From NCBI RefSeq assembly GCF_011386835.1, contig NC_088807.1:24304001-24368000 (forward strand): a stretch of DNA of 64,000 nt, read 5' to 3'. The stretch comes from Chrysemys picta bellii (lineage: Eukaryota). The notes under the pieces are model-generated. The model was not told where the DNA came from. It worked only from the letters and a program-made list of their open reading frames with translations, and ran no database searches. Made by a program: the position numbers and the translations under genes. This document shows, in pieces, positions 13,282-59,222 of this stretch. How positions within the stretch are numbered: the first letter of the stretch is position 1; every line of letters begins with the position of its first letter.

Positions 13282-14242
13282 CCGCAAGGCTCAAACAGCT
13301 TTCTATTATTTTGACATAATCTCATGAGTTTTAAAGACCATCTCGTGATCTGTGGTGAGCTTGACTCCTGGTTTTTTTTTTGAACAGTTGGGTTTGGCCA
13401 GACTGAGATCACAAAGATTTGCCTTCTGGCTGAGATTTCGCGGTTGGGGTGAGCCCAGAGCCGGTCTGGGATGGGTGGTTTCCTCGGGGTGGATATGGTT
13501 GAAGTTCCCCCACCCCGACCGGAGCTGCCACATGGTCGCAAACGGGAAATCTCTCCCTCCCCGCCTTGTAACAAAGGCAAACGAGCTGCCCCCTTTCCAG
13601 TCTCCGAGCCCCCAAATCCGGTTTTAGAAAGGCAGATTGTTAACCATCTGAGGAGATCGGGAAATGAACAGCTCTCTCGCCTCCTGGAGAAGAGAAAGGT
13701 TAGTTTAGGATATAATTCATTCAGCCTGTCCCTATAAAATCTGGTATTAAAACAAAAAACCCCTTCGGTTTATTTTGTCTATAAAAGACCATCCATAGAA
13801 CACACTGGGTTTCAAGCATAAAGGGAATAAAGACGCGAGCTCTTCCAAGCTAGATGAGATAGAAAGGACACAGACATTTCATGTTGATTCACCTAAACGT
13901 GTCGCCCAGAAGTGAGGAGTTTTGCATTTCCTGTTCAGAGCTGGCCCATCTAACCAATGCATGTTCTTAATAGCCAAGAAAATACCTAGCATATTTACAG
14001 CATTATGAAACCCTCATTAAATGGGTTTTAATGATTACACAGTACTTGACTGAGTTAAGCTCCAGGAACAAAGAACATGACTAGGGCTATCCTAGATATT
14101 CAAAGCTCATTTTAAAATGGTTCCTTTAGTGACTTTCTGCTGGTAAAACAGTGACTCAAGCTCTCATTGACAAAGTGGGTGGCTCTTAAAAGAGCCTTTG
14201 GGTTTTAGGTGTAACAACTTCCCGGANNNNNNNNNNNNNNNN

Positions 14243-15394
<1,152 letters not shown>

Positions 15395-22781: not shown

Positions 22782-23162
22782 TTACTTGGAGCTNNNNNNN
22801 NNNNNNNNNNNNNNNNNNNNNNNNNNNNNNNNNNNNNNNNNNNNNNNNNNNNNNNNNNNNNNNNNNNNNNNNNNNNNNNNNNNNNNNNNNNNNNNNNNNN
22901 NNNNNNNNNNNNNNNNNNNNNNNNNNNNNNNNNNNNNNNNNNNNNNNNNNNNNNNNNNNNNNNNNNNNNNNNNNNNNNNNNNNNNNNNNNNNNNNNNNNN
23001 NNNNNNNNNNNNNNNNNNNNNNNNCAGCACCTTGTAGACATAAATGGAGTAACTCTCCTTGCGGGTCTTGCGGCGCTTCTTATCCCCCTTCTTCTGGGTC
23101 TTGGTCACCGCTTTCTTGGAGCCCTTCTTGGGCGCGGGAGCGGACTTGGCTGGATCAGGCAT
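22782..23162 (-). CDS. H2B: Histone H2B (MPDPAK N-terminus; middle in N gap)
   Basis: Start and ..SSK* end are visible; the gap 22794-23024 preserves the 381-nt length. Stem-loop at 22736-22751. Confidence 0.95.
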
Positions 23163-26290: not shown

Positions 26291-27846
26291 AGCCGCCCCC
26301 CTCGGAGCCCGCCGGCTCCCGACAACCCCCCAAAAGGCTCTTCTAAGAGCCACCACGTATCCACATGAAAGAGTTGAAACCCATCCTGAACTGCCTTAAT
26401 CCGGGTTAAATTCATAAGTGGATTCTCCAAACACGGAATCCGTTTAGTGCAATACTTGTGGTACTCCGCTTCCTCTAATGTCGCAATTGGGTAGTTCTGC
26501 AACTGCGAGTTTGTTTATCACAAATATACGGGAAACGTTTGAGTTTAACCTCTGATGGGCCATACAAAGCAGTACCCGCACTCCTTAAACCTCTTCCCTG
26601 TAGCGGAAAGAGTTCAGGACAAACCTGACCCTTTTCATTTTAAAACGCCCTAGTTTAAAAACGTGGCTTCTCCAATGATCAACCCAGCATGTCCAGACCA
26701 TGATATTCAGGGAACAAGAAAACATAAAGGCGAATAATTGGCCGATACAGTAATAACTGAGGGGGGTTGGAGAAAGGAAGTGACTACAGTGAGTTTCTCT
26801 AGGGGGAGAAAATGAATCAAATATTTTATCACCATTTTGTTTCTGGCTTGTTTTCAAACCTCGTTCGAAACCGGGCCTGAGTGAAGATTCAGAGTCGGTT
26901 TGAGCACAAAGTTCTGGCTCCGGATTGGCAGCTTCTCTTTTGTTTGGAGGAAAGGTGTTTGGTTTGGTGTGAATAAAAGTAGCCATTTTATTCAACGCCG
27001 CCTCCTTCACGAGAGGGTGGGTTGATAGGCAAGTGACTGGGGAGGGGTGAGCTAATTGCAGAAGCTCATTAATTAAGCCCCTCACCGGTCCGCTGCCCGC
27101 CACGGGTGCCCCCAACTTCAATCAACCCACCCTGAGAAGTTGGTGTAGACTCGAGGCTTCTAAATACAGTCAGTCCCCAACCTCCCAACAAACCGCCTGA
27201 AACACGGCACCTCCTTCCCTTCTGCCAGCACCCCTCTCTAATCCGGTGCCAGCCCCCGAGGGGAATGGGGGAAAGGAAAGGGAGTGACCGTGTCTGTCTG
27301 CGGGGTGTTCTATTTCCTCCCGGAACTCAACCCCACCAGCAGGGAGGACACAGAAGCCGGGGGAGGGAGAGGTGCTCTCTCTGCTGTCAGGGTCTAGCCT
27401 TGACTAGATCCGGGCATTTACTCTATTCCCTCGGTGGCGAAGTGCTAAAGCCCGGCTGGGTCTGAATTCGTTTTAGCTGAGCGGAGGGAAGCGGTTTGTG
27501 CTGCGTGTGTTCACACGGAGCAGGGTATGCCGACTCCTTGCCTTGTACACCGAGTTGTAGAGANNNNNNNNNNNNNNNNNNNNNNNNNNNNNNNNNNNNN
27601 NNNNNNNNNNNNNNNNNNNNNNNNNNNNNNNNNNNNNNNNNNNNNNNNNNNNNNNNNNNNNNNNNNNNNNNNNNNNNNNNNNNNNNNNNNNNNNCAGAAC
27701 AAGTCAACCCACAACCCCCCACATCGCCTTGCAGGGGCAGCCACGCGCTTCTCCAGCCACGCGCATGCCCTGGGTTGCAGCCCCGCAAGACAGGCAGGTG
27801 CAACTGGAGCTGGGTTTGTTTGCTGGCCACAGAGGCCCGTGTTTCA

Positions 27847-30458: not shown

Positions 30459-31105
30459 TGTGGGGTAAGAAGGATTATCTTGCAGAATTGTTAGTCCTCC
30501 AAGCTTCACACAGGCCTTCACACACGACTCAGGCAAACTAAGAATGCATAGAAAGGACATATGTTTCTGGGAGAATATTCTTGGCAATGAGATTTCCTTT
30601 GTCTGAAACCCTATAATGATACTGATATGGGAATTTAGTGTGTGTGTGTGGGGGGAGCGGGAGGAGGAAGTAAAGTGCCCGTCGCTTCCAGATGCGGGCA
30701 AGACACAGATCCAGCTCTTAGTCTGACACCAAACGGTGGTAAATTATCTATTTCTTTCTGTAATCTGGGTAGGGCTGTACTAATCTCTGACTGATTATTT
30801 TAGATTAAATATTTCTGATTGAGCCTGTTATTTTGACAATCCTGAGTCGTGAACTCAGACAAGCAACAACCCCTTCTTCCCCTCTGCCCCTCCACCTTTT
30901 CTTGTTTTCTGGAATGCTGCTCTGTCTCAAAGAAGTTCAGAGCCATCTATGACCCCTTCATCTCCTCCTCCTTCCAGCTCCTCTCACAGAGCTCTGGGTC
31001 CCTCTGGCTCACATGGCATCTGCAGCCACCCTCCTCTTCCTTCAACCCACCCAGTTCCTCCGTGGCCACGGGCCAGGTGACCGACTCTTCCACCCATCAA
31101 CATGG

Positions 31106-34100
31106 TGTGACGAACTGGGCCTGTTCTCACTGTGGTCTGTGAATGCTGACAGGGGAGTGGGGCTGGGATAGTCTGCATTGGAGGATGGGATCTGCCCGGG
31201 GGCGCATTCCTGAGTGTGTAACATGAGAACCCAGGAAGGGGTTGAAGGCCAGGTGACTCCTGAGCCCGGGAAACTGAACAAAGGCTGTGGGAGGGGTCGC
31301 TGAAGCCAGAGTGCTGGAAGCAGGCTGGAGAGATGGCTGGGAGGCAGAGATGGCTCTGACCTCCCAAGGGGGGCTGGGCTGGGATGCCCGGGGACCCCAA
31401 GATGGACCTAACTGAGGGGGTCCCTGTTGTCAGTGCCTGCAAGACCTGTCTTGGACTGTATTCCTGTCATCCAAATAAACCTTCTGCTTTACTGGCTGGC
31501 TGAGAGTCATGGTGAATTGCAGGGAGCCGGGGGTGCAGGGCCCTGAGTTCCCCAATACTCCGTGACAACTGGTGGCAGCGGTGGGATCTACTGCACCCCG
31601 TGGACGGCGCTTCCTGCAGTAAGTGACTGGGGAGCAGTAAAACGAAGGGGGATTGACGGGGACCAGGCCTGCTGAAGAGTGGGAGAGAGACGGTTATTAC
31701 CCCTGGGAGTGTGTGACCAGCGAGAAGGACTTTTGCAGTAACAGGGTCCCCCGGGGGGATCGTAGCGAGTGGTCCCAGGGGCGGAGGAGTCTGCAGCTCG
31801 ACCCTGGCAGAGAGGCGGTGACCTCGAGAAGGGCTGGCACACTAGGGGTCCCCCTGGGAACTGTGGGGAGCTGTGAGCACACAGGCCGGTGAGTGGCCAG
31901 CAGGAAGATGTATGCCAAGCGGCTTAAGAGCGACCTGGTGGAGCTGTGCAAGCAGAGGCGGCTGCGCATTGGGAGGCTCACCAAAGAACAGCTCATTGCC
32001 CAGCTGGAGGCGGAAGATCGCGCGAATGAACTGATCCCTGTGTCTCAGGGAAGCAGCCTGGCAAATGCAGCGCAGGCACCAGTGTCTGTCCCAGCTGGGA
32101 GTGGTCAGCCGGCTGCTGAGGGCTTCCCGAGACCCCCCCTTCCTATGCCTAGGGGAAGGGTGGGGAGGAGCCCAGCAAGTACCGAGGGCGCCGTGACCCT
32201 CCCGGCCAGCAGGGGATCCCCCCGGCGACGTTCGGCATCCGTGGAGCGGAATTGGCTGGAATGGGAGAAGGAGCTAAAACTGAGAGAGCTGGAGGATCGT
32301 GAACGACAGAGACAGCATGAAGAGAGACAGCATCAGCATGAACGGGAGGAGAAAGAGAGACAGCATCAGCGTGAAGAGAGACAGAGACAGCATGAACGGG
32401 AGGAGAATGAGAGACAGCGTCAGCATGACCTGGAACTGGCGAGATTGAAGGGCAGCGAACCCCCGGCTGCGGTGAGTGAGGGGGGACCCAGGACTGCACG
32501 GAGCTTTGATAAGTGCATCATGGCCCCATACAAGGAGGGGGAGGACATGGATGACTTCCTGGAGGCCTTTGAGACGGCCTGCGAGCTGCACCGGGTTGAT
32601 CCCGCGGACAGACTCCGGGTCCTTACCCCCTTACTGGACCCCAAAGCCATGGCATTGTACCGCCAACTGGAGGAGGCAGAGAAAGGGGACTACGAACTAT
32701 TCAAAAAGGCCCTGCTACGAGAGTTTGGGCTGACGCCTGAGATGTACCGGGAAAGGTTCCGGAGTCAGGATAAAACCCCTGAGATCTCATATCTGCAACT
32801 AGCCACCCGCATGGAAGGATACGCCAGCAAGTGGGCTGATGGGGCCCAGACGAAGGAGGACCTGGTCAAACTGCTGGTACTGGAGCAACTGTATGAGCGG
32901 TGCCCATCTGACCTGAGGCTGTGGTTGGTGGACAGAAAGCCAGAGAACCCGCGACAGGCAGGCCGGCTGGCCGATGAGTTCGTAAAGAGCCGGTCAGGAG
33001 ATAAAAGGGAGGAGTCCCAAAGGAGCAATCCCACCACAACGCAGAGAGCGAGTCACCATGGGACCTCCCCGTGGGAAAATACAGAAAAACCCCATCAGAG
33101 GGGAACATCCGGCATCAGGACCATCCGACCCACTCAAGGGGTCCCATGGGACATGGGCTGCTACCACTGTGGCCAAAAGGGCCACATACGGGCCCAGTGC
33201 CCCAGGCTCAGGGACAGACTGAGCAGGCCGAACCCACAGAGGGTTGACTGGGTAGAGACCCAGCCCGGCGAGAGGCAGCATTCCCAGGGAAGGGGGGCTG
33301 GCAGAGTACCACCTGCTAAGGAGGGAGGAGAGCCCCAGGCTAGCTTCTCTGGGGGGCCAGATGCCCCGGATTCAAAGTTCTCCGTTTACAGGGTTGGCGC
33401 GGGGCTGTCCCTGCGGAGCGAGTGCCTTGTTCCCCTGGAGGTGGATGGGAAGAAAGTTTATGGTTACTGGGACACGGGCGCAGAGGTGACACTGGCCCGG
33501 CCCGAGGTGGTGGCCCCAGATCGGGTGGTGCCCAACACCTTCCTGACCCTGACCGGGGTGGGCGGGACCCCATTCAAGGTTCCCGTAGCGAGGGTACACC
33601 TGAAATGGGGGGCCAAGGAGGGCCCCAAGGACGTGGGAGTGCACCACCATTTGCCCACTGAGGTGTTGATGGGGGGGGACCTAGAGGACTGGCCAAGCAG
33701 CCCCCAGACCGCCTTAGTTGTGACCCGCGGTCAGAGCCGGCGAGGGGCACTGCGCCCTGGCCTTGGGGGGGGTGCCTTGCCTGAGGCGCAGGACCCTAAC
33801 CTGGTGGGGAGGGAACGCCCAGGGACGCGGCTCAGGGAGGCTGCAGCTTCGGACCCAGCGGGCGAGAAAGAGCAGGTGACCATCCCCGTCCCAGCTGCTG
33901 AGTTCCAGGCCGAGTTACAGAGAGATCCCTCCTTGCGGAAGATAAGGGACCTGGCTGACCTCAATGCGGTACAGACCATGGGACGAGGTGGCCGGAAAAG
34001 GTTCCTGTGGGAGAAGGGGTTCCTGTACCGAGAATGGGCTCCCCCAGGGAAAATGGAGTCAGGGGGGATCAGGAGGCAGCTGGTGGTACCCCAGAAGTAT

Positions 34101-35121
34101 CGCCGCCAGGTGCTGTGCCGGGCCCATGACATTCCCCTCGCAGGGCACCAGGGAACCTGGCGTACCCAGCAGAGGCTGCTACGGAGCTTTTACTGGCCTG
34201 GGGTCTTTGTTACTGTCCGACAGTACTGCGGATCCTGTGACCCCTGTCAGAGGGGGAGGAAGGCCTGGGACAAGGGGAAAACAGCTTTAGGACCCTTGCC
34301 CAGCATAGAGGAGCCTTTCCGGAGGGTGGCCAAGGTTAAAAGGGCGGCTCTAAACCAAGAGAGCCCAAAGCACAGACCTCCAGACTGGAGCGCTGGGAGA
34401 AGACCACAGCCCAGTTGGAGCCCCAGAGGTATGGGGGTGGGAAAAGGGCACAGGCCGCATAAACCTTCCCACATGCGAACTGCGAGTGCCATCAAGCACC
34501 CCCAACCTAAGGGGGGGCGTGAAACTGGAGGGGCCTGGTGTAATTCTCACCAAGGAATGGGAGGGATGCGGGGGCATCCATGGGAACGGGGGTAGGTTCG
34601 AACTTCCCCGGGTCACTGGCTAAAGTGACCCTGCTCAGTTCGGTCTCGAAGGGGGGAGATGTGACGAACTGGGCCTGTTCTCACTGTGGTCTGTGAATGC
34701 TGACAGGGGAGTGGGGCTGGGATAGTCTGCATTGGAGGATGGGATCTGCCCGGGGGCGCATTCCTGAGTGTGTAACATGAGAACCCAGGAAGGGGTTGAA
34801 GGCCAGGTGACTCCTGAGCCCGGGAAACTGAACAAAGGCTGTGGGAGGGGTCGCTGAAGGCAGTGTGCTGGAAGCAGGCTGGAGAGATGGCTGGGAGGCA
34901 GAGATGGCTCTGACCTCCCAAGGGGGGCTGGGCTGGGATGCCCGGGGACCCCAAGATGGACCTAACTGAGGGGGTCCCTGTTGTCAGTGCCTGCAAGACC
35001 TGTCTTGGACTGTATTCCTGTCATCCAAATAAACCTTCTGCTTTACTGGCTGGCTGAGAGTCATGGTGAATTGCAGGGAGCCGGGGGTGCAGGGCCCTGA
35101 GTTCCCCAATACTCCGTGACA
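31106..35121 (+). mobile_element. Young non-autonomous Gmr1-like Ty3/Gypsy LTR retrotransposon
   Basis: 462-bp LTRs 31106-31567 and 34660-35121 (TG..CA, 2 differences seen), 5-bp TSD catgg, PBS tggtggcagcggtgggat 31570-31587 (complementary to the tRNA-Leu 3' end), PPT 34648-34659. Confidence 0.96.
31908..34595 (+). CDS. Gag(SCAN-like, CCHC)-protease-integrase zinc finger polyprotein, 895 aa, lacking integrase core, RT and RNase H
   Basis: Uninterrupted ORF from ATG 31908. It contains an ER/QH coiled-coil, LEQLYERCPSDLRLWLVDRKP (SCAN-like), CYHCGQKGHIRAQC, YWDTGA (aspartic protease) and H-x5-GH...WPG...C-x2-C (integrase ZnF), then homology breaks after EEPFRRVA. Confidence 0.9.
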   Translation: MYAKRLKSDLVELCKQRRLRIGRLTKEQLIAQLEAEDRANELIPVSQGSSLANAAQAPVSVPAGSGQPAAEGFPRPPLPMPRGRVGRSPASTEGAVTLPASRGSPRRRSASVERNWLEWEKELKLRELEDRERQRQHEERQHQHEREEKERQHQREERQRQHEREENERQRQHDLELARLKGSEPPAAVSEGGPRTARSFDKCIMAPYKEGEDMDDFLEAFETACELHRVDPADRLRVLTPLLDPKAMALYRQLEEAEKGDYELFKKALLREFGLTPEMYRERFRSQDKTPEISYLQLATRMEGYASKWADGAQTKEDLVKLLVLEQLYERCPSDLRLWLVDRKPENPRQAGRLADEFVKSRSGDKREESQRSNPTTTQRASHHGTSPWENTEKPHQRGTSGIRTIRPTQGVPWDMGCYHCGQKGHIRAQCPRLRDRLSRPNPQRVDWVETQPGERQHSQGRGAGRVPPAKEGGEPQASFSGGPDAPDSKFSVYRVGAGLSLRSECLVPLEVDGKKVYGYWDTGAEVTLARPEVVAPDRVVPNTFLTLTGVGGTPFKVPVARVHLKWGAKEGPKDVGVHHHLPTEVLMGGDLEDWPSSPQTALVVTRGQSRRGALRPGLGGGALPEAQDPNLVGRERPGTRLREAAASDPAGEKEQVTIPVPAAEFQAELQRDPSLRKIRDLADLNAVQTMGRGGRKRFLWEKGFLYREWAPPGKMESGGIRRQLVVPQKYRRQVLCRAHDIPLAGHQGTWRTQQRLLRSFYWPGVFVTVRQYCGSCDPCQRGRKAWDKGKTALGPLPSIEEPFRRVAKVKRAALNQESPKHRPPDWSAGRRPQPSWSPRGMGVGKGHRPHKPSHMRTASAIKHPQPKGGRETGGAWCNSHQGMGGMRGHPWERG

Positions 35122-35409
35122 CATGGCCATTCCCTTGACCTTTCTCATCTTCATCCGTCGCTGACCGTCGCCTGGTCTTTCAGCACCATCTACGAGCTCT
35201 CTCCCTCTCCTGTGCCAGCCTGCCCGTTTGTGACATTCAGCCCACCTGTGCTGAGCGATTTTGCTTCTGCCAATGCCCTGCTTTCTCTTCTGCTGCTGTG
35301 GTTGATTCTTTCCATCCTGTGTCCTTCTCCGCTCTTGGCTCTATGTCCCTCTGTCTTGCGGCAAGCTCCATGCGGCCAACTCCCAGCCCTGGGTTACCCC
35401 CCAACCCCT

Positions 35410-36122
35410 CATGACGAAGTGGCATTTTCCCTTATGTTGTATGTGAGTCTTACTGTTGAGCCTACGTGAGTTTTACTGTTTTGCATGAATACTGTGTGTG
35501 CCTCAGTTTCCCTGGGTGCTGCACCAATACCTCGGTGGTGGGAATAAGGGCGTGTGACTTTGGTTGAGACCTCTGGGGCAGGTGAGGCTGCCATAGCTGC
35601 CTGCATGTAGGTGCCCTTCGTAACCTGAGACCCAGGAGGGGGATGCAACCAGGTGATTCTGGCAAAGACAAGGAGGAGCTACGGGAGTGTCTGAGGTGTG
35701 GAAGCTGACAGTCTGCTTGGGGGCACTGGAAGATGGGGCATCCAGGGTGTCTGGCCCAGGACTCCCCAAGATGGACTTTGTTGAAAGTCACTGATTTCTG
35801 TTATAACAAGTTCTGGTCTATGCTGTTTTCCTGTCGACTAATAAACTTTCTGTTTTACCGGCTGGCTGAGAGTCACGTCTGACTGAAGAGTCGGGGTGCA
35901 GGGCCATCTGGCTTTCCCAGGAGCCCTGTCCAGGCGGGCTTGCTGCGGGAAGCACACGGTGTGGACGGGGATGCTGAATGCTCTGAGGTCAGACCCAGGA
36001 AGGTCAAAGCTGTGGTAGCTTCTTGCCCTGACGACAGTCTGCTCCGAGAGATGAGGATCCACCAGAGTCTTGCCTGGCTTCATATGGAGCAGTTCCAGAG
36101 CATTGCCGGGGGACTCCGTGAC
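35410..36122 (+). mobile_element. Solo LTR (related to the LTR at 42952-43687)
   Basis: (ca)tgacgaagtgg...ggactccgtgaca with internal ctaataaactttctg; shares ctgacagtctgcttg and ccccaagatggactt with the other LTR. Confidence 0.8.
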
Positions 36123-37901: not shown

Positions 37902-38507
<606 letters not shown>

Positions 38508-39401
38508 TTCAGTTTTTTAAAGCGAGAAACCATGTTTATTCAATTCAAAGGCTCTTTTAAGGGCCACCCACTCGTCCACGGAAAGAGCTTGTTGCACTGC
38601 TGTGTTGGGTTAGAAGTGAAGTGGTCTGTAGGGGTGTATCAATGGGGTCGTTTACTCGCCATAAGGGAACTCTCAAACTTAGGGGGAAGAGGGTAAAAAC
38701 TGCTTTCTACCCCGGTCCTGTAACGATTATGTTAACCTTAAGGATGTAACTAGTTCTGCGAACAGTTTTTTTTTTCCCCGGAAGGATTTTGATTTACATC
38801 GTGTTGGGACTAGAAAGAATTCGGAACTCTGGGCGTTTACACGCAGAAGGAAAGAGGAGCGAAAAATCCTCGAGTGCGCGCAGAAGAAAGGGGACGTGCA
38901 GCCCCGGCCTTGCGTGCAATACAGCGGCAGAACCGATTTTGGGGAGAGGGACGTTAAAACTTCGAGCACGATGTCACATTCCCTCAGTGTCTCTGGCTTA
39001 GAGTTTCGCCCTCTGTGTTGAGGTAATATTCCAACACCCGGATTGCCACAGAGCGGGGTGCAGCAGCTCCCCTCACCCCATACTGCACCGGGGGTGGGGG
39101 ATCCTGGGTCCTACAAGCCCGGGGCCGAAAAATCTCTTTCACCCTGTCCGGCGTGTTCAGACGGAGGCGGGTGTTTATTCCCACGCGTTTTGCGGCTCCT
39201 TTCTGCGCATGCTCAGGAATAAGTCCGGGCTCCAAATTTAAAGTTAACGGCTGGCTAGTAATTGGCTGGGGTGCGGTACTCGGTGTCTGATTGGTGGGTG
39301 TCGAGCCGCGTCACCAGGTAGGGCTGGGAAAGGGACGGGAGAAACAGTTGCCGCCGGCTTCCCTCACAGTTCTCCCTCTGGTCCGATCACAGCCTAGTTA
39401 A

Positions 39402-39767
<366 letters not shown>

Positions 39768-56937: not shown

Positions 56938-59222
56938 ACCCTCAGCCACACCCACAAAGTAGATGGCCCATCTAAAAGCCCTTCCCTGCCTGCAGGCAAA
57001 GAACTGGATTTGTTCCAAACCAAAGTTATGTAAATAACAGAGTTAAGGTAAAAAACGTCCTGAAGTCGTCTCAGAACCGAAGTAACACATCACAAAGTTT
57101 AGGTTCTGAGTGGGGTTTTCTGCAGTGCCTTCCTACTTGCTGCCTCATTTCTCCATGGGCTGCTTTGGTTTTTCCCTTTGTATTCATCCCCTCCACAAAA
57201 ATCCCATGCCTTTTAAATGGAAGCAGAGTAAAATTAAACATGCTTTCCATAACACACCTAAACTACACGCTTTGCCAAACCCTATTATAGAGCTCCTCTT
57301 ACTTCTGTTAAAAACAAAAATGGGGAAAAAAATCTGTATTTCTCAAAATGTAGTCCCCGCTTTAACTGTGACCACCCAGAATGACAGTAGCAAGAACATA
57401 CTGGGTCAGACTATGGTCCATTTTGTTCAATAGCCTATACCTGACAGTGGTCCATACCAGAGTTTCAGGAGGAAGTGTACAGAACAGGGCAATCACGGTG
57501 TAATCTACCCTGGCTTCTGTTCCTGGTAGTCAAAAAGTTAGGGTCACATGGAGCCACTAGTGCAGGGGTTCTGCCAACAAACTTTTTGGTGGCCACAGAG
57601 TACGGCCACCAACTCTTACTGGTGGCCACGCTGACAATTTTTCCTAAAATATTTAATTAACTTCAGGAAAAAAAAACAAATACATATGCACATACACATG
57701 TCCAAAACATTGTCATTTATTCCTGTAGGGTTTTTGTTAGACTCAGTCATAAAAACAATGTACAATTGTCTCTATTCTTCACGGGCCCTAAACAGAATAG
57801 AAACACAAATAAGGCGTTCTGCATGTTCTTGTCTTTTGTTGTTGTTTCTTTTGCTTTTTAAAAAAAGACTAGCTAGCTAGTAAGTCTGCGGCTGTCAGAA
57901 GTGATATCTGCATGTTTGTTAATATCACTTTTCACAGCAGAAAATTTAATTTGTCCTGGGACAAATTAAGCCCTGGGTGGGGAGATGGGCAGGGAGGCAG
58001 TGGGGCTCAGGGACCAGGGCGGGGATGGTGAGCCTGGGGCCACAGCCTGCCATCACGTGGATGGAGCCTGAAGCCCTGCAGCTGAAGTCACTCCCCCCTA
58101 GTAAAGTGGGGAATTCACCAGCTGCCAGCACCTCCAGCATTTGTGTCTTCAGAGGGGGGCAGCCTGGGAGACGGGCCCCTGCTTTGCCCCCTCCCCAGTC
58201 ACAGCCTAGGAGGCTGTGACCACAAGAATAGCCCATAGGGCAGCATTTCTCAAATGCGGCCACCAACAGGCCTGTCCTCCCTGAATGTATCCAGTTCTTT
58301 TCTGACCCCCAAGTTATGCTTTTGGGCAGAACAACATCCCATGGCACTGAGTTAGCTGTGTGAAAAATACTTCCTCTTCTTTGTATTAAACCTGCGGAAT
58401 ATTAATTTCCTTGGGTGGACTCTGGTTTTTGTATTGTGTACCTCTCTTCCTGCTGTGTTCTTGGAAATCTCTCACCATACACACACCCCATTTACTTGTA
58501 ATGGAACACATCTGATCTAGGGTAGACAGTACAGTATCTGCAATTGTGTTCTCATTTTCTTTGCTAGTGGATAGTTCCATATAGTAATTCTGGAGTTCCA
58601 GGTTCTAGCATAACAGTTTAGCATCAGATTTCTACATCTAATATAACCATATAAGGAGTGAATGGTCTGTGTCCACACAGTAAACTTCCTACCATGTAGA
58701 CATGACCGCAAATCTTTTAGACTGCATTCAGTGCCTAGACACTTTCGGTATAGTAGCATAATTTTTCTCCCCAGTGATAAACCCAGGGAACTCAATCTAT
58801 TTACCTTAATAAAGACAAGGTTAAGAGGTGATTTGATCAGTCTGAAAGTAGCAACAAGTGGAACAACTACTTGAGAAAGTTGCTGACCTGACAATTAATT
58901 ATCCCTAGTAATTAGTTATCTTGACGGTATCAAGACCCCTCCCAGCTAACTTGCCTACAACTGACAAAACTAATGCATAAAATCCAGTAAAACACAAAAA
59001 GTAACATGCCAACTAGCTAGATAAACTTGCAACAAATTAATTCAAATGTCTTGCCATGCTGAGACCCACAGCTATTGTGAATTACACCTTCCCTTTAGCA
59101 GGTAGCCTTGGTCCAGGCCTTAACACACACAGCTTAAGTCCCAGATGCCTGGTTCCTTTCCCAGCTTGACTATATTTTGTGTGTGGTTTTAGGAAAGACA
59201 CTTAGGCCAGTGTTTTCAGGTT

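What the first reader, a model, noticed from the sequence alone, without database searches (positions are those of the whole stretch)
31106..35121. Very young non-autonomous Gmr1-like element with an intact Gag-SCAN-protease-integrase ZnF ORF and a novel tail
Seen: LTRs differ at only 2 of 462 positions by eye; TSD, tRNA-Leu PBS and PPT are perfect. There is one stop-free 895-aa ORF with no gag/pol frameshift: an N-terminal helical motif (LKSDLVELCKQRRLRIGRLTKEQLIAQL, SAP/LEM-like by inference), an ER/QH coiled-coil, a capsid/SCAN-like region, CCHC knuckle, DTG protease and HHCC integrase finger, then an approximately 87-aa tail replacing integrase core, RT and RNase H. Known: Gmr1-like Gag is the source of the SCAN domain, and integrase precedes RT in this clade. 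Inference: a recently mobile parasite-of-a-parasite that supplies its own capsid and protease, may form RNA-carrying virus-like particles, and borrows RT/IN in trans. It is also raw material for Gag domestication.
Basis: partly seen in the sequence, partly recalled or inferred. Interest (0 to 1): 0.75.

Follow-up and report, generated by a model that had tools for sequence, protein, structure and literature searches.

The report
Semi-autonomous Gmr1-like retrotransposon in a turtle
This is a young, intact copy of a turtle jumping gene that makes its own shell protein and protease but lacks the enzymes for copying and inserting itself; it belongs to an old, multi-copy lineage whose front half has been swapped more than once with that of a complete partner element, so it is a clean vertebrate example of a parasite of a parasite, not a one-off deletion.

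Summary
Window 31106-35121 is a complete LTR retrotransposon. It has 462-nt LTRs with 2 differences, a 5-bp target-site duplication (CATGG), an 18/18 primer-binding site for tRNA-Leu(AAG), a polypurine tract and one 895-aa ORF. The ORF reads SAP-like N-terminus, coiled coil, two-lobed capsid (SCAN), CCHC knuckle, retropepsin, integrase H2C2 finger, then an 87-aa tail.

The junction is not single-copy. Sixteen other Chrysemys picta loci and a Gopherus copy carry the same junction and tail. The tail also occurs in Macrochelys and Caretta proteins.

Chrysemys also holds at least eight intact 1552-1644-aa autonomous Gmr1-like Gag-Pol loci.

The element is a mosaic:
- Gag and protease are 88-100% identical to that autonomous family.
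- The linker plus H2C2 is only 70-73% identical to it, and forms a separate clade shared with the Gopherus copy.
- Region-specific trees and AU tests reject the alternative groupings.

Best reading: an ancient partner-dependent lineage whose private 3' module (H2C2, tail, probably U3) persists while its gag-protease half has been replaced from resident partners more than once.

The tail has no detectable homologue outside this lineage, is predicted disordered and basic, and its last ~30 residues vary in frame. The kind is known from plants and mice.

DNA of other copies could not be fetched, so dN/dS and LTR matching remain untested.

The parts
31101..31105 (+). Left target-site duplication CATGG
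   Evidence: Identical 5 bp at 35122-35126
31106..31567 (+). 5' LTR, 462 nt, TG...CA ends; AATAAA at 31474-31479
   Evidence: Alignment of the two LTRs shows 2 differences; polyadenylation signal found
31570..31587 (+). Primer-binding site, complementary to the 3' end of tRNA-Leu(AAG)
   Evidence: 18/18 match to the published tRNA-Leu(AAG) 3'-end probe; sequence read
31568..31907 (+). Leader (5' UTR), 340 nt, no upstream ATG
31908..34595 (+). Single ORF of 895 aa plus stop: Gag, protease, integrase N-terminal finger, tail
31917..32030 (+). N-terminal helix-loop-helix (aa 4-41), a divergent SAP-like motif
   Evidence: AF2 predicts helices 7-16 and 26-41 at pLDDT about 90. The window protein has no Pfam hit. 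A profile of the turtle N-termini recruits alligator and frog Gmr1-like N-termini, which score sub-threshold on Pfam SAP (6e-4 to 0.05). A sea-urchin Gmr1-like N-terminus is above the SAP threshold, but the turtle profile does not reach it significantly (E 0.05-0.8)
32235..32453 (+). E/R/Q/H-rich long helix (aa 110-182), partly encoded by two imperfect 54-nt repeats at 32286-32393
   Evidence: AF2 helix 110-182 at pLDDT above 90; repeat family D2; length varies among copies
32520..32996 (+). Two-lobed capsid (aa ~205-363); the C-terminal lobe is the SCAN-like domain (aa 277-363)
   Evidence: Pfam SCAN 6e-12; PDB sequence hits to ZNF24 and PEG3 SCAN; Foldseek top matches are PNMA2, Arc, MLV CA and Ty3 capsid
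33156..33203 (+). CCHC zinc knuckle (aa 417-432)
   Evidence: Pfam zf-CCHC; the ligands are invariant in 17 copies
33411..33695 (+). Retropepsin protease (aa 502-596), DTG at 33471-33479
   Evidence: AF2 beta-rich fold at pLDDT 70-92; Foldseek to Ddi1 RVP and HIV-1 PR at E about 5e-5; weak M-PMV PR sequence match; 99% identical to the autonomous partner's protease
33744..33761 (+). Approximate boundary (aa 613-618) between the partner-like 5' module and the private 3' module
   Evidence: Identity to P0082 falls from 99% (aa 491-612) to 70% (aa 613-726)
34086..34259 (+). Integrase N-terminal H2C2 zinc finger (aa 727-784), divergent orphan version
   Evidence: Pfam Integrase_H2C2 5e-18; folded at pLDDT 77-92. 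It is 73% identical to the partner's H2C2, whereas autonomous H2C2 is 95-98% conserved between turtle families. The ligands H740, H747, C774 and C777 are invariant in 17 copies
34332..34599 (+). 268-nt filler of unknown origin. Frame 1 encodes the 87-aa tail (34332-34592, stop 34593-34595)
   Evidence: Junction shared by 17 Chrysemys-type copies and Gopherus. No similarity to pol in any frame or to the rest of the window. Only lineage members found among 1.84 billion representatives. Predicted disordered, pI 11.8
34600..34659 (+). Remnant of the ancestral pol C-terminus, out of frame with the ORF, with TAA at 34621-34623; its last 12 nt are the polypurine tract (34648-34659)
   Evidence: tblastn to P0007 aa 1515-1534 at 85%; DNA alignment with the older autonomous-type remnant in the window; polypurine tract
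34660..35121 (+). 3' LTR, 462 nt
35122..35126 (+). Right target-site duplication CATGG

Best explanation
The feature is a structurally intact, recently inserted copy of a semi-autonomous Gmr1-like (Ty3/mdg4-type) LTR retrotransposon of an emydid turtle.

What it encodes. It carries every cis element: LTRs, a tRNA-Leu(AAG) primer-binding site, a polypurine tract and a clean leader. Its one polyprotein supplies Gag (SAP-like N-terminus, coiled coil, two-lobed capsid, CCHC nucleocapsid) and a retropepsin. It lacks the integrase core, RT and RNase H.

How it moves (inferred). Its RNA is packaged in particles built partly from its own Gag. It is reverse-transcribed and integrated by Gag-Pol from a resident autonomous Gmr1-like family, the P0082 type in Chrysemys picta.

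Two modules (shown at protein level).
- A 5' module (gag and protease) is almost identical to the partner's in the same host lineage.
- A private 3' module (PR-IN linker, a diverged orphan H2C2 finger, a 268-nt filler read as the tail, and by inference the polypurine tract and U3) is shared by tail-bearing copies of Chrysemys and Gopherus and is old.

How the mosaic arose (inferred). The 5' module was replaced at least twice, once in the emydid and once in the tortoise lineage, most simply by template switching between co-packaged partner and parasite RNAs. This would keep the parasite's Gag and protease compatible with the current partner.

The tail. It is basic and predicted disordered. Its last third is dispensable. 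Whether its first 57 residues matter as protein, as cis-acting RNA/DNA, or not at all is unresolved.
For: Anatomy.

Multi-copy junction:
- 16 further C. picta loci of 871-930 aa, with distinct LOC ids on several chromosomes, share the same junction and tail.
- Gopherus evgoodei P0057 has the same junction.
- The tail also occurs in Macrochelys and Caretta proteins.

Autonomous relatives have the order SCAN, CCHC, PR, H2C2, rve, SH3, RVT, RNase H.

Partner: at least 8 intact C. picta loci of 1552-1644 aa, 96-99.9% identical to each other.

Mosaic: identity to P0082 is 94-99% in Gag 1-363, 88-100% in the protease, and 70-73% in aa 613-808. P0082's H2C2 is 98% identical to the Chelonoidis element and 95% to the Natator element.

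Trees:
- Capsid-CTD plus protease: Chrysemys tail copies and P0082 form one clade (100/99), and Gopherus P0057 groups with the tortoise autonomous elements (98/94). A single clade of tail copies is rejected (p-AU 0.0003).
- Linker plus H2C2: all tail copies form one clade (100/99). A clade of all Chrysemys rows is rejected (p 0.0033), as is a clade of all tortoise rows (p 0.0066).

Open frame: a neutral-substitution simulation leaves the 253-codon 3' module open with P about 0.02 at the observed 28% divergence.

Shared ends: the 3' terminus (pol end, polypurine tract, first ~14 nt of the LTR) is conserved with an older autonomous-type remnant in the same window.
Against: - There is therefore no dN/dS, no LTR/PBS comparison with the partner, no copy census and no empty-site test.
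- All other copies are gene-model proteins. Annotation selects intact ORFs and may splice.
- The window's exact ORF is not in the protein collection, so the host species is inferred. Presence of the partner in this very genome is assumed.
- The groups for the AU tests were named after the identity pattern had been seen.
- The partner's LTR, as far as its read-through C-terminus shows, diverges from this LTR after about 14 nt. That fits a private U3, but it also means matching LTRs are not shown.
- The tail alone staying open is not unlikely by chance (P about 0.04 for shuffles of the filler; P about 0.36 in the divergence simulation).
- Expression and mobility are untested.
Confidence: 0.75

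Rival explanations
1. A one-off internal deletion or an assembly artefact at about 34330, in an otherwise ordinary autonomous element.
For: None beyond the prior possibility. Only one copy is in the window.
Against: The same junction and tail occur in 16 other annotated C. picta loci on several chromosomes and in Gopherus. The LTRs, target-site duplication, primer-binding site and polypurine tract are coherent.
Confidence: 0.01
2. The ~900-aa loci are a domesticated host gene family (Gag-protease genes spread by duplication), and this copy merely keeps old LTRs.
For: - Many loci keep an intact ORF and are annotated as genes.
- Catalytic and zinc ligands are invariant.
- The 3' module stays open more than neutral decay predicts.
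Against: - This copy has near-identical LTRs, a target-site duplication, a perfect primer-binding site and a polypurine tract. These mark retrotransposition, not duplication.
- Copies are dispersed, and terminal branches are short under long internal branches, as in transposon bursts.
- The gag half tracks the resident autonomous element.
Confidence: 0.05
3. The element is semi-autonomous as described, but the mosaic comes from ectopic gene conversion between genomic copies, or from one recent chimera per host lineage. It does not come from recurrent template switching in co-packaged RNAs.
For: Protein trees show incongruence but not its mechanism. Only two host lineages are sampled for the whole junction region.
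Against: The three Chrysemys subfamilies each have a different mosaic pattern. The window type has a 57%-identical aa 364-490 segment, and the P0003 type has an 88%-identical protease. That points to several exchanges. Template switching is the standard recombination route of retroelements (own knowledge).
Confidence: 0.15
4. The tail-bearing 3' module is shared between turtle families through horizontal transfer, not long vertical persistence.
For: The tail is found in four families, but in only one to a few annotated proteins outside Emydidae.
Against: In the linker-H2C2 tree, the Gopherus-Chrysemys distance among tail copies (about 0.18) is similar to the distance between the autonomous elements of the same hosts (about 0.24) (the same clades hold in the tree rebuilt without P0013). 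This is what vertical descent predicts. The gag half of each copy matches the local autonomous family.
Confidence: 0.1

Closest known systems
Autonomous Gmr1-like elements of turtles (for example Chrysemys picta LOC135981052, P0082, 1622 aa; Caretta P0007)
   Same: - Same N-terminal SAP-like motif, coiled coil, SCAN-type capsid, CCHC knuckle and protease.
- Integrase finger placed directly after the protease.
- Same pol C-terminal end, polypurine tract and LTR terminus.
- Gag is 94-99% and the protease 88-100% identical to P0082.
- Abundance of Gmr1-like elements in turtles is published (bioRxiv 10.1101/2025.03.03.638093).
   Different: About 790 aa (integrase core, SH3, RT, RNase H) are replaced by a 268-nt unrelated filler. 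The linker and H2C2 are 27-30% diverged from the partner. The LTR beyond its first ~14 nt appears different.
Wheat semi-autonomous RLG_Sabrina / RLG_WHAM with autonomous RLG_Wilma, and non-autonomous RLC_Angela subfamilies (Wicker et al. 2021, PMC9744471)
   Same: - Gag-encoding elements without RT or IN that co-evolve with an autonomous partner for millions of years.
- Incongruent trees between parts of the element.
- 'Host switches' attributed to template switching or gene conversion.
   Different: - Plant Ty3 and Ty1 lineages, not a vertebrate Gmr1-like one.
- Here the protease and an orphan integrase finger are also kept.
- Here the exchanged part is gag-protease rather than the LTR. The LTRs themselves could not be compared.
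Mouse IAP I-delta-1 and the ETn/MusD pair (own knowledge, not checked with tools)
   Same: Internally deleted or non-coding LTR elements that are mobilised in trans by full-length relatives. In IAP I-delta-1 the deletion creates a novel fused polyprotein, and the deleted form is highly active.
   Different: Those are class II endogenous retroviruses of mammals. Their deletions are recent and do not carry a long-lived private module shared between host families.
Barley BARE2/BARE1 and plant TR-GAG elements (BARE2 as cited in PMC9744471; TR-GAG from own knowledge)
   Same: Partial coding capacity and dependence on a partner's proteins.
   Different: BARE2 lacks Gag and keeps pol, the reverse of this case. 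TR-GAG elements encode Gag only, whereas this element also keeps the protease and H2C2.

Membership tests
Gmr1-like clade of Ty3/mdg4 (gypsy) LTR retrotransposons | LTR retrotransposon structure: LTRs with TG...CA ends, target-site duplication, tRNA primer-binding site, polypurine tract | tested here: met
Gmr1-like clade of Ty3/mdg4 (gypsy) LTR retrotransposons | Integrase placed upstream of RT (order PR-IN-RT-RH) | tested here: met
   In the window the H2C2 finger follows the protease. In the full-length relatives P0007, P0082 and P0080 the Pfam order is H2C2, rve, SH3, RVT, RNase H. RT itself is absent from the window copy.
Gmr1-like clade of Ty3/mdg4 (gypsy) LTR retrotransposons | Gag capsid C-terminal domain of the SCAN type | tested here: met
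   Pfam SCAN 6e-12; ZNF24 and PEG3 SCAN structures matched by sequence
Gmr1-like clade of Ty3/mdg4 (gypsy) LTR retrotransposons | RT phylogeny groups with the reference Gmr1 of cod | not tested
   No reference Gmr1 sequence was available, and the window copy has no RT.
Non-autonomous / semi-autonomous LTR retrotransposon | Lacks at least one enzyme needed for retrotransposition while keeping the cis elements | tested here: met
   No rve, RVT or RNase H in the ORF or in other frames. The cis elements are intact.
Non-autonomous / semi-autonomous LTR retrotransposon | The defective structure is propagated: many dispersed copies share the same junction | tested here: met
   17 copies including the window, plus Gopherus, at protein level. 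The DNA-level census was not possible.
Non-autonomous / semi-autonomous LTR retrotransposon | An autonomous partner in the same genome with matching cis sequences (LTR ends, primer-binding site, packaging region) | tested here: inconclusive
   An intact autonomous family with near-identical Gag and protease exists in C. picta. The LTR terminus and polypurine tract are conserved with an autonomous-type remnant.
Non-autonomous / semi-autonomous LTR retrotransposon | Mobilisation in trans demonstrated | not testable with these tools
   Needs an experiment.
SAP domain (Pfam PF02037) | Sequence match to the SAP profile above threshold | tested here: not met
   The window N-terminus gives no hit even at E up to 10.
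SAP domain (Pfam PF02037) | Helix - extended loop - helix of about 35 residues, homologous to recognised SAP motifs | tested here: inconclusive
   AF2 predicts helices 7-16 and 26-41 at pLDDT about 90. A profile of the turtle N-termini recruits alligator and frog Gmr1-like N-termini, which score SAP at 6e-4 to 0.05. A sea-urchin Gmr1-like N-terminus is above the SAP threshold (29.5 bits), but the turtle profile reaches it only at E 0.05-0.8.
Retropepsin (peptidase A2) | D-T/S-G active site in a retropepsin fold | tested here: met
   DTG at aa 522-524, with D522 and T523 invariant and G524 nearly invariant in 17 copies; Foldseek to Ddi1 RVP and HIV-1 PR at TM 0.55-0.67. There is no Pfam hit for the window sequence. 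Activity is not tested.
LARD / TRIM (non-coding non-autonomous LTR elements) | No coding capacity | tested here: not met
   895-aa intact ORF
Domesticated Gag-derived host gene (SCAN-ZNF, PNMA, Arc type) | Single or few fixed loci without LTRs, under host control | tested here: not met
   This locus has LTRs, a target-site duplication, a primer-binding site and a polypurine tract, and it belongs to a dispersed multi-copy family.

The most novel reading that the evidence does not exclude
The private 3' module (diverged H2C2 finger plus the basic disordered tail) may be a selected, parasite-specific protein module rather than debris. It could recruit the partner's integrase or RT, or the element's own RNA, into mixed particles. 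Alternatively the whole element may act as a 'Gag supplier' that corrects the 1:1 Gag:Pol output of single-ORF Gmr1-like elements. In that case partner and parasite would form a cooperative two-component retroelement maintained since before the emydid-tortoise split (probably tens of millions of years, a date I did not compute).
Probability: 0.2. Interest if true: 0.75.

Novelty: new member of a known kind. Interest (0 to 1): 0.55.

Why it matters
Semi-autonomous LTR retrotransposons that co-evolve with a partner are well described in cereals. I found no vertebrate Gmr1-like case in the papers searched.

Turtles evolve slowly and still hold apparently intact autonomous and semi-autonomous copies. 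This pair therefore offers a tractable vertebrate system for three questions:
- How does a defective retroelement stay compatible with its helper?
- Which parts of Gag-Pol must be supplied in cis?
- What happens to an integrase zinc finger once it is orphaned?

It also bears on the SCAN domain. These are living relatives of the capsid that gave rise to it, expressed here as a Gag-protease protein without pol, and several annotated chimeric gene models contain pieces of it.

For genome annotation, at least 17 'uncharacterized protein' genes of this type, and at least 8 of the autonomous type, in Chrysemys picta are transposon ORFs.

Tried and rejected
**Fetching DNA of other copies.** As a result there is no dN/dS, no LTR comparison with the partner, no copy census and no empty-site check.

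**Origin of the tail and filler.**
- tblastn of 14 autonomous proteins against 34201-34680 in six frames found only the H2C2 end and the last 20 pol residues.
- A gap-tolerant collinear alignment of the tail to the integrase-RT-RNase H part of P0007 scored 120, against 117 +/- 9 for shuffled tails. The suggestive in-frame matches in the MAFFT alignment are therefore chance.
- Sensitive blastn and tblastx against the whole window found nothing.
- Pfam gave nothing.
- phmmer against 1.84 billion representatives returned only lineage members plus one low-complexity repeat protein.
- hhalign of a tail profile against an autonomous pol profile gave probability 0.14%.
- RNA folding of the filler gave z = -2.45, which is mild and not decisive.

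**N-terminus.** The PDB sequence search gave only chance hits. BLASTP to the sea-urchin SAP-bearing protein gave nothing.

**Compensated frameshifts as the cause of the divergent aa 364-490 segment.** Rejected: the segment aligns collinearly in one frame at 62-64%.

**The first tree.** It covered aa 279-806 as one block and gave a misleading single 'tail clade' (SH-aLRT 91). It was replaced by region-specific trees.
- Rows left out: P0018, P0021, P0059 and P0063, as too gappy.
- Row left out: P0013, which has no real sequence in that region (branch length 3.1).

**Limits I kept.** The N runs in the window were left alone.

Full report
**1. What is in the sequence**

Window 31106-35121 is a complete LTR retrotransposon.
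- The two 462-nt LTRs (31106-31567 and 34660-35121) differ at 31306 and 31310 only.
- They begin TG and end CA, and are flanked by a perfect 5-bp duplication, CATGG.
- Two bases after the 5' LTR, 31570-31587 matches 18 of 18 bases of a published probe complementary to the 3' end of human tRNA-Leu(AAG). The UAG isoacceptor probe differs at one base (PMC6103689). No tRNA-Leu gene lies in the window itself.
- A 12-nt purine run (34648-34659) abuts the 3' LTR. The LTR holds AATAAA at 31474. The 340-nt leader has no ATG.
- One ORF runs from ATG 31908 to the stop at 34593-34595, 895 aa, with no frameshift.

**2. The protein**

Pfam finds SCAN (aa 277-363, 6e-12), a CCHC knuckle (417-432) and the integrase H2C2 finger (727-784, 5e-18).

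An AlphaFold model of aa 1-440, built with 23 aligned sequences, gives:
- a confident helix-loop-helix at aa 7-41;
- a disordered stretch at 43-106;
- one long helix at 110-182;
- a two-lobed helical domain at 214-363.

The best structural matches of that two-lobed domain are the PNMA2, Arc, MLV, dArc and Ty3 capsids and SCAN dimers. Gag therefore carries a complete capsid, not only its SCAN-like C-terminal lobe.

A second model, of aa 480-895, shows:
- a beta-rich domain at 502-596 that matches Ddi1 and HIV-1 proteases (E about 5e-5, TM 0.55-0.67) and has DTG at 522-524;
- a folded H2C2 region;
- nothing ordered after residue 785.

Pfam and PDB sequence searches alone barely see the protease.

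The N-terminal motif gets no SAP hit itself. It is, however, conserved at the start of Gmr1-like Gag in turtles, frogs and alligator. The alligator and frog versions score sub-threshold on Pfam SAP (6e-4 to 0.05). A sea-urchin Gmr1-like protein scores above threshold, although the turtle profile reaches that protein only at E 0.05-0.8. I read the motif as a divergent SAP-type element that is ancestral to the clade. This rests on transitive evidence only.

**3. The tail and what it replaces**

Autonomous relatives continue after the residues that end the H2C2 region into the integrase core, an SH3 domain, RT and RNase H. That is the Gmr1 order, with integrase ahead of RT.

In the window, homology stops at nt 34331 and resumes at 34600. 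There the last 20 residues of the ancestral pol, the polypurine tract and the LTR start are recognisable, but in another frame and after the ORF's stop.

Between them lie 268 nt with no detectable similarity to:
- pol in any frame, by a permutation test or by profile comparison;
- the rest of the window;
- Pfam;
- any protein among 1.84 billion representatives other than members of this lineage.

So about 2.4 kb was not simply deleted. It was replaced by a short unrelated filler.

Read in frame, the filler gives an 87-aa tail that is basic (pI 11.8), rich in proline and glycine and predicted disordered.

**4. The junction is multi-copy and old**

The word search identified the host as a turtle.
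- Sixteen Chrysemys picta bellii proteins of 871-930 aa, with separate LOC ids on several chromosomes, carry exactly the same junction and tail.
- The window's own ORF is not in the collection. The window therefore comes either from an unannotated locus or from a close emydid relative.
- A Gopherus evgoodei protein has the same junction at about 70% identity.
- The tail also ends a Macrochelys suwanniensis model, where it follows a truncated RNase H, and a Caretta caretta model, where it follows unrelated sequence.

Those two gene models may be spliced, so they show only that the tail sequence exists in those genomes.

Among the 17 emydid-type copies:
- The first 57 tail residues are as conserved as the folded domains (mean pairwise identity 0.98).
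- The last 30 occur in at least three frame states. One state results from a one-base length change in a C run and is present in two subfamilies. The distal tail is therefore dispensable.
- The active-site D522 and T523 (G524 is nearly invariant) and the zinc ligands C418, C421, H426, C431, H740, H747, C774 and C777 are invariant.

**5. A partner, and a mosaic**

The first search could not see proteins longer than 1.75 times the query. A search with the pol part of a sea-turtle element found a Chrysemys picta family of intact Gag-Pol proteins. The representative, P0082, is 1622 aa. At least eight loci of 1552-1644 aa are 96-99.9% identical to each other.

Identity of the tail-bearing copies to this family:

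| Region (aa) | Identity to the P0082 family |
|---|---|
| Gag, 1-363 | 94-99% |
| Protease, 491-612 | 88-100% (the window copy is 99%) |
| Linker plus H2C2, 613-808 | 70-73% |

By contrast, P0082's own H2C2 is 98% identical to a Chelonoidis element and 95% to a Natator element.

Region-specific maximum-likelihood trees make this formal.
- Capsid-CTD plus protease:
  - Chrysemys tail-bearing copies and P0082 form one clade (100/99).
  - The Gopherus tail-bearing copy sits with the tortoise autonomous elements (98/94).
  - Holding all tail-bearing copies together is rejected (p-AU 0.0003).
- Linker plus H2C2:
  - All tail-bearing copies form one clade (100/99).
  - Grouping by host is rejected for Chrysemys (p 0.0033) and for tortoises (p 0.0066).

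The groups were named after I had seen the identity table, so these p-values are somewhat optimistic. The likelihood differences are nonetheless large, at 50-105 log units.

The three Chrysemys subfamilies are themselves different mosaics. The window type has a 57%-identical aa 364-490 segment from an unknown donor, collinear in one frame. The P0003 type has an 88%-identical protease.

**6. How it most likely works**

Shown:
- The copy has all cis elements and an intact Gag-protease ORF.
- It lacks RT, RNase H and the integrase core.
- The structure is propagated.
- An intact autonomous family with a nearly identical Gag and protease exists in a closely related or the same genome.
- The two halves of the element have different histories.

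Inferred:
- The element is transcribed from its LTR, and its product co-assembles with the partner's Gag-Pol.
- Its RNA is reverse-transcribed and integrated in trans.
- Co-packaging with partner RNA allows template switching. This has replaced the gag-protease half at least twice, while the 3' module persists. That module is linker, orphan H2C2 and filler, and, because U3 is copied from the 3' end of the RNA, presumably also the polypurine tract and U3.

Consistent with a private U3, the read-through C-termini of the partner proteins suggest that their LTR diverges from this one after about 14 nt. The extreme terminus and the polypurine tract are conserved with an autonomous-type remnant in the window.

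The orphan H2C2 has changed more than ten times as much as the autonomous H2C2 over the same host split (26% against 2%). This indicates relaxed or altered constraint. Even so, a neutral simulation leaves the 253-codon 3' module open only about 2% of the time at the observed divergence, so some selection for an open frame is likely. For the tail alone there is no such signal (P about 0.36; P about 0.04 for shuffles).

**7. Age**

Two differences in 462 nt give about 1-4 My for neutral rates of 0.5-2 x 10^-9 per site per year. The rates come from my own knowledge, and the two differences may be one event. The copy is young. The lineage, shared with tortoises, is old. I did not compute a date.

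**8. Comparison with what is known**

- Gmr1-like elements are reported to be abundant in turtles, and their capsid is the accepted source of the SCAN domain.
- Semi-autonomous Gag-encoding elements that co-evolve with an autonomous partner, with incongruent trees for different parts and 'host switches' by template switching, are described in wheat.
- Deleted, trans-mobilised forms such as mouse IAP I-delta-1 and ETn/MusD are known to me, but I did not check them here.
- I found no description of this turtle family in the papers searched.

I therefore file it as a new member of a known kind. It is notable for its vertebrate host, for keeping the protease and an orphan integrase finger, and for its clear two-module history.

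**9. Limits**

All comparisons with other copies therefore rest on annotated proteins, which are biased towards intact ORFs.
- dN/dS, the copy census, LTR matching, expression and the empty-site test remain open.
- Nothing in the window looked human.
- The N runs were left untouched.

Noticed in passing
window 14157-61330 (histone stem-loops) and 27984-63089 (tRNAs): The window is a replication-dependent histone gene cluster mixed with tRNA genes. It holds ten histone 3' stem-loops (Rfam RF00032) and seven tRNA genes: Thr, Met, Gly, Ala, Ser, Asn and Lys. Three of the five N runs (14227-14485, 22794-23024, 27564-27694) lie near, but not immediately next to, a histone stem-loop or a tRNA gene, and all five were left alone. 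From memory only: in human, SCAN zinc-finger genes sit beside the histone/tRNA cluster on 6p22, so Gmr1-like insertions in the turtle counterpart may be worth a look.
   Followed up: partly
window 43681-45509 (-), LTR about 42989-43680 (-); 35455-36080 (+); 58530-58747 (-): An older, frameshifted autonomous-type Gmr1-like pol remnant (integrase C-terminus, RT, RNase H; 56-65% identical to P0007) lies with its 3' LTR. An inverted copy of that LTR, 85-89% identical, lies only about 330 nt downstream of the focal element. A third small RNase H fragment lies at 58.5 kb.
   Followed up: partly
window 46091-46255 (+): An LTR-like fragment 78% identical to the 3' third of the focal LTR, next to the tRNA cluster at 47.5-49.9 kb.
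   Followed up: no
window 38172-38510, 39432-39770, 42122-42436 (inverted): Three copies, 88-91% identical, of an unrelated repeat of about 300-340 nt.
   Followed up: no
window 31306 and 31310: The only two LTR differences are 4 nt apart. They may be a single multi-nucleotide event or a short conversion tract, which would halve the age estimate.
   Followed up: no
window 32286-32393: The E/R/Q/H-rich helix is partly encoded by two imperfect 54-nt tandem units (72% identical). The length of this region differs among copies.
   Followed up: partly
window 32997-33377 (aa 364-490): In the window's subfamily, the segment around the CCHC knuckle is only 55-66% identical to every other copy or autonomous element compared, although the flanking capsid and protease are 94-99% identical to the partner. 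It aligns collinearly in one frame. Its donor is unknown.
   Followed up: partly
related proteins P0011, P0016, P0078, P0201, P0042, P0043: Several annotated turtle gene models join pieces of these elements to host-like domains or carry host names. Examples are CDK12-like with a SEA domain, Ig domains plus SCAN, a Caretta protein ending in the tail, 'dystrobrevin beta isoform X1', and names such as golgin and calponin-homology. They may be exonisation events or annotation artefacts.
   Followed up: no
related protein P0004 (Lepidochelys kempii, 1063 aa): A different shortened form in a sea turtle: Gag, protease and H2C2 followed by RNase H, without the integrase core and RT. It may be an independent deletion derivative or a spliced gene model.
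   Followed up: no
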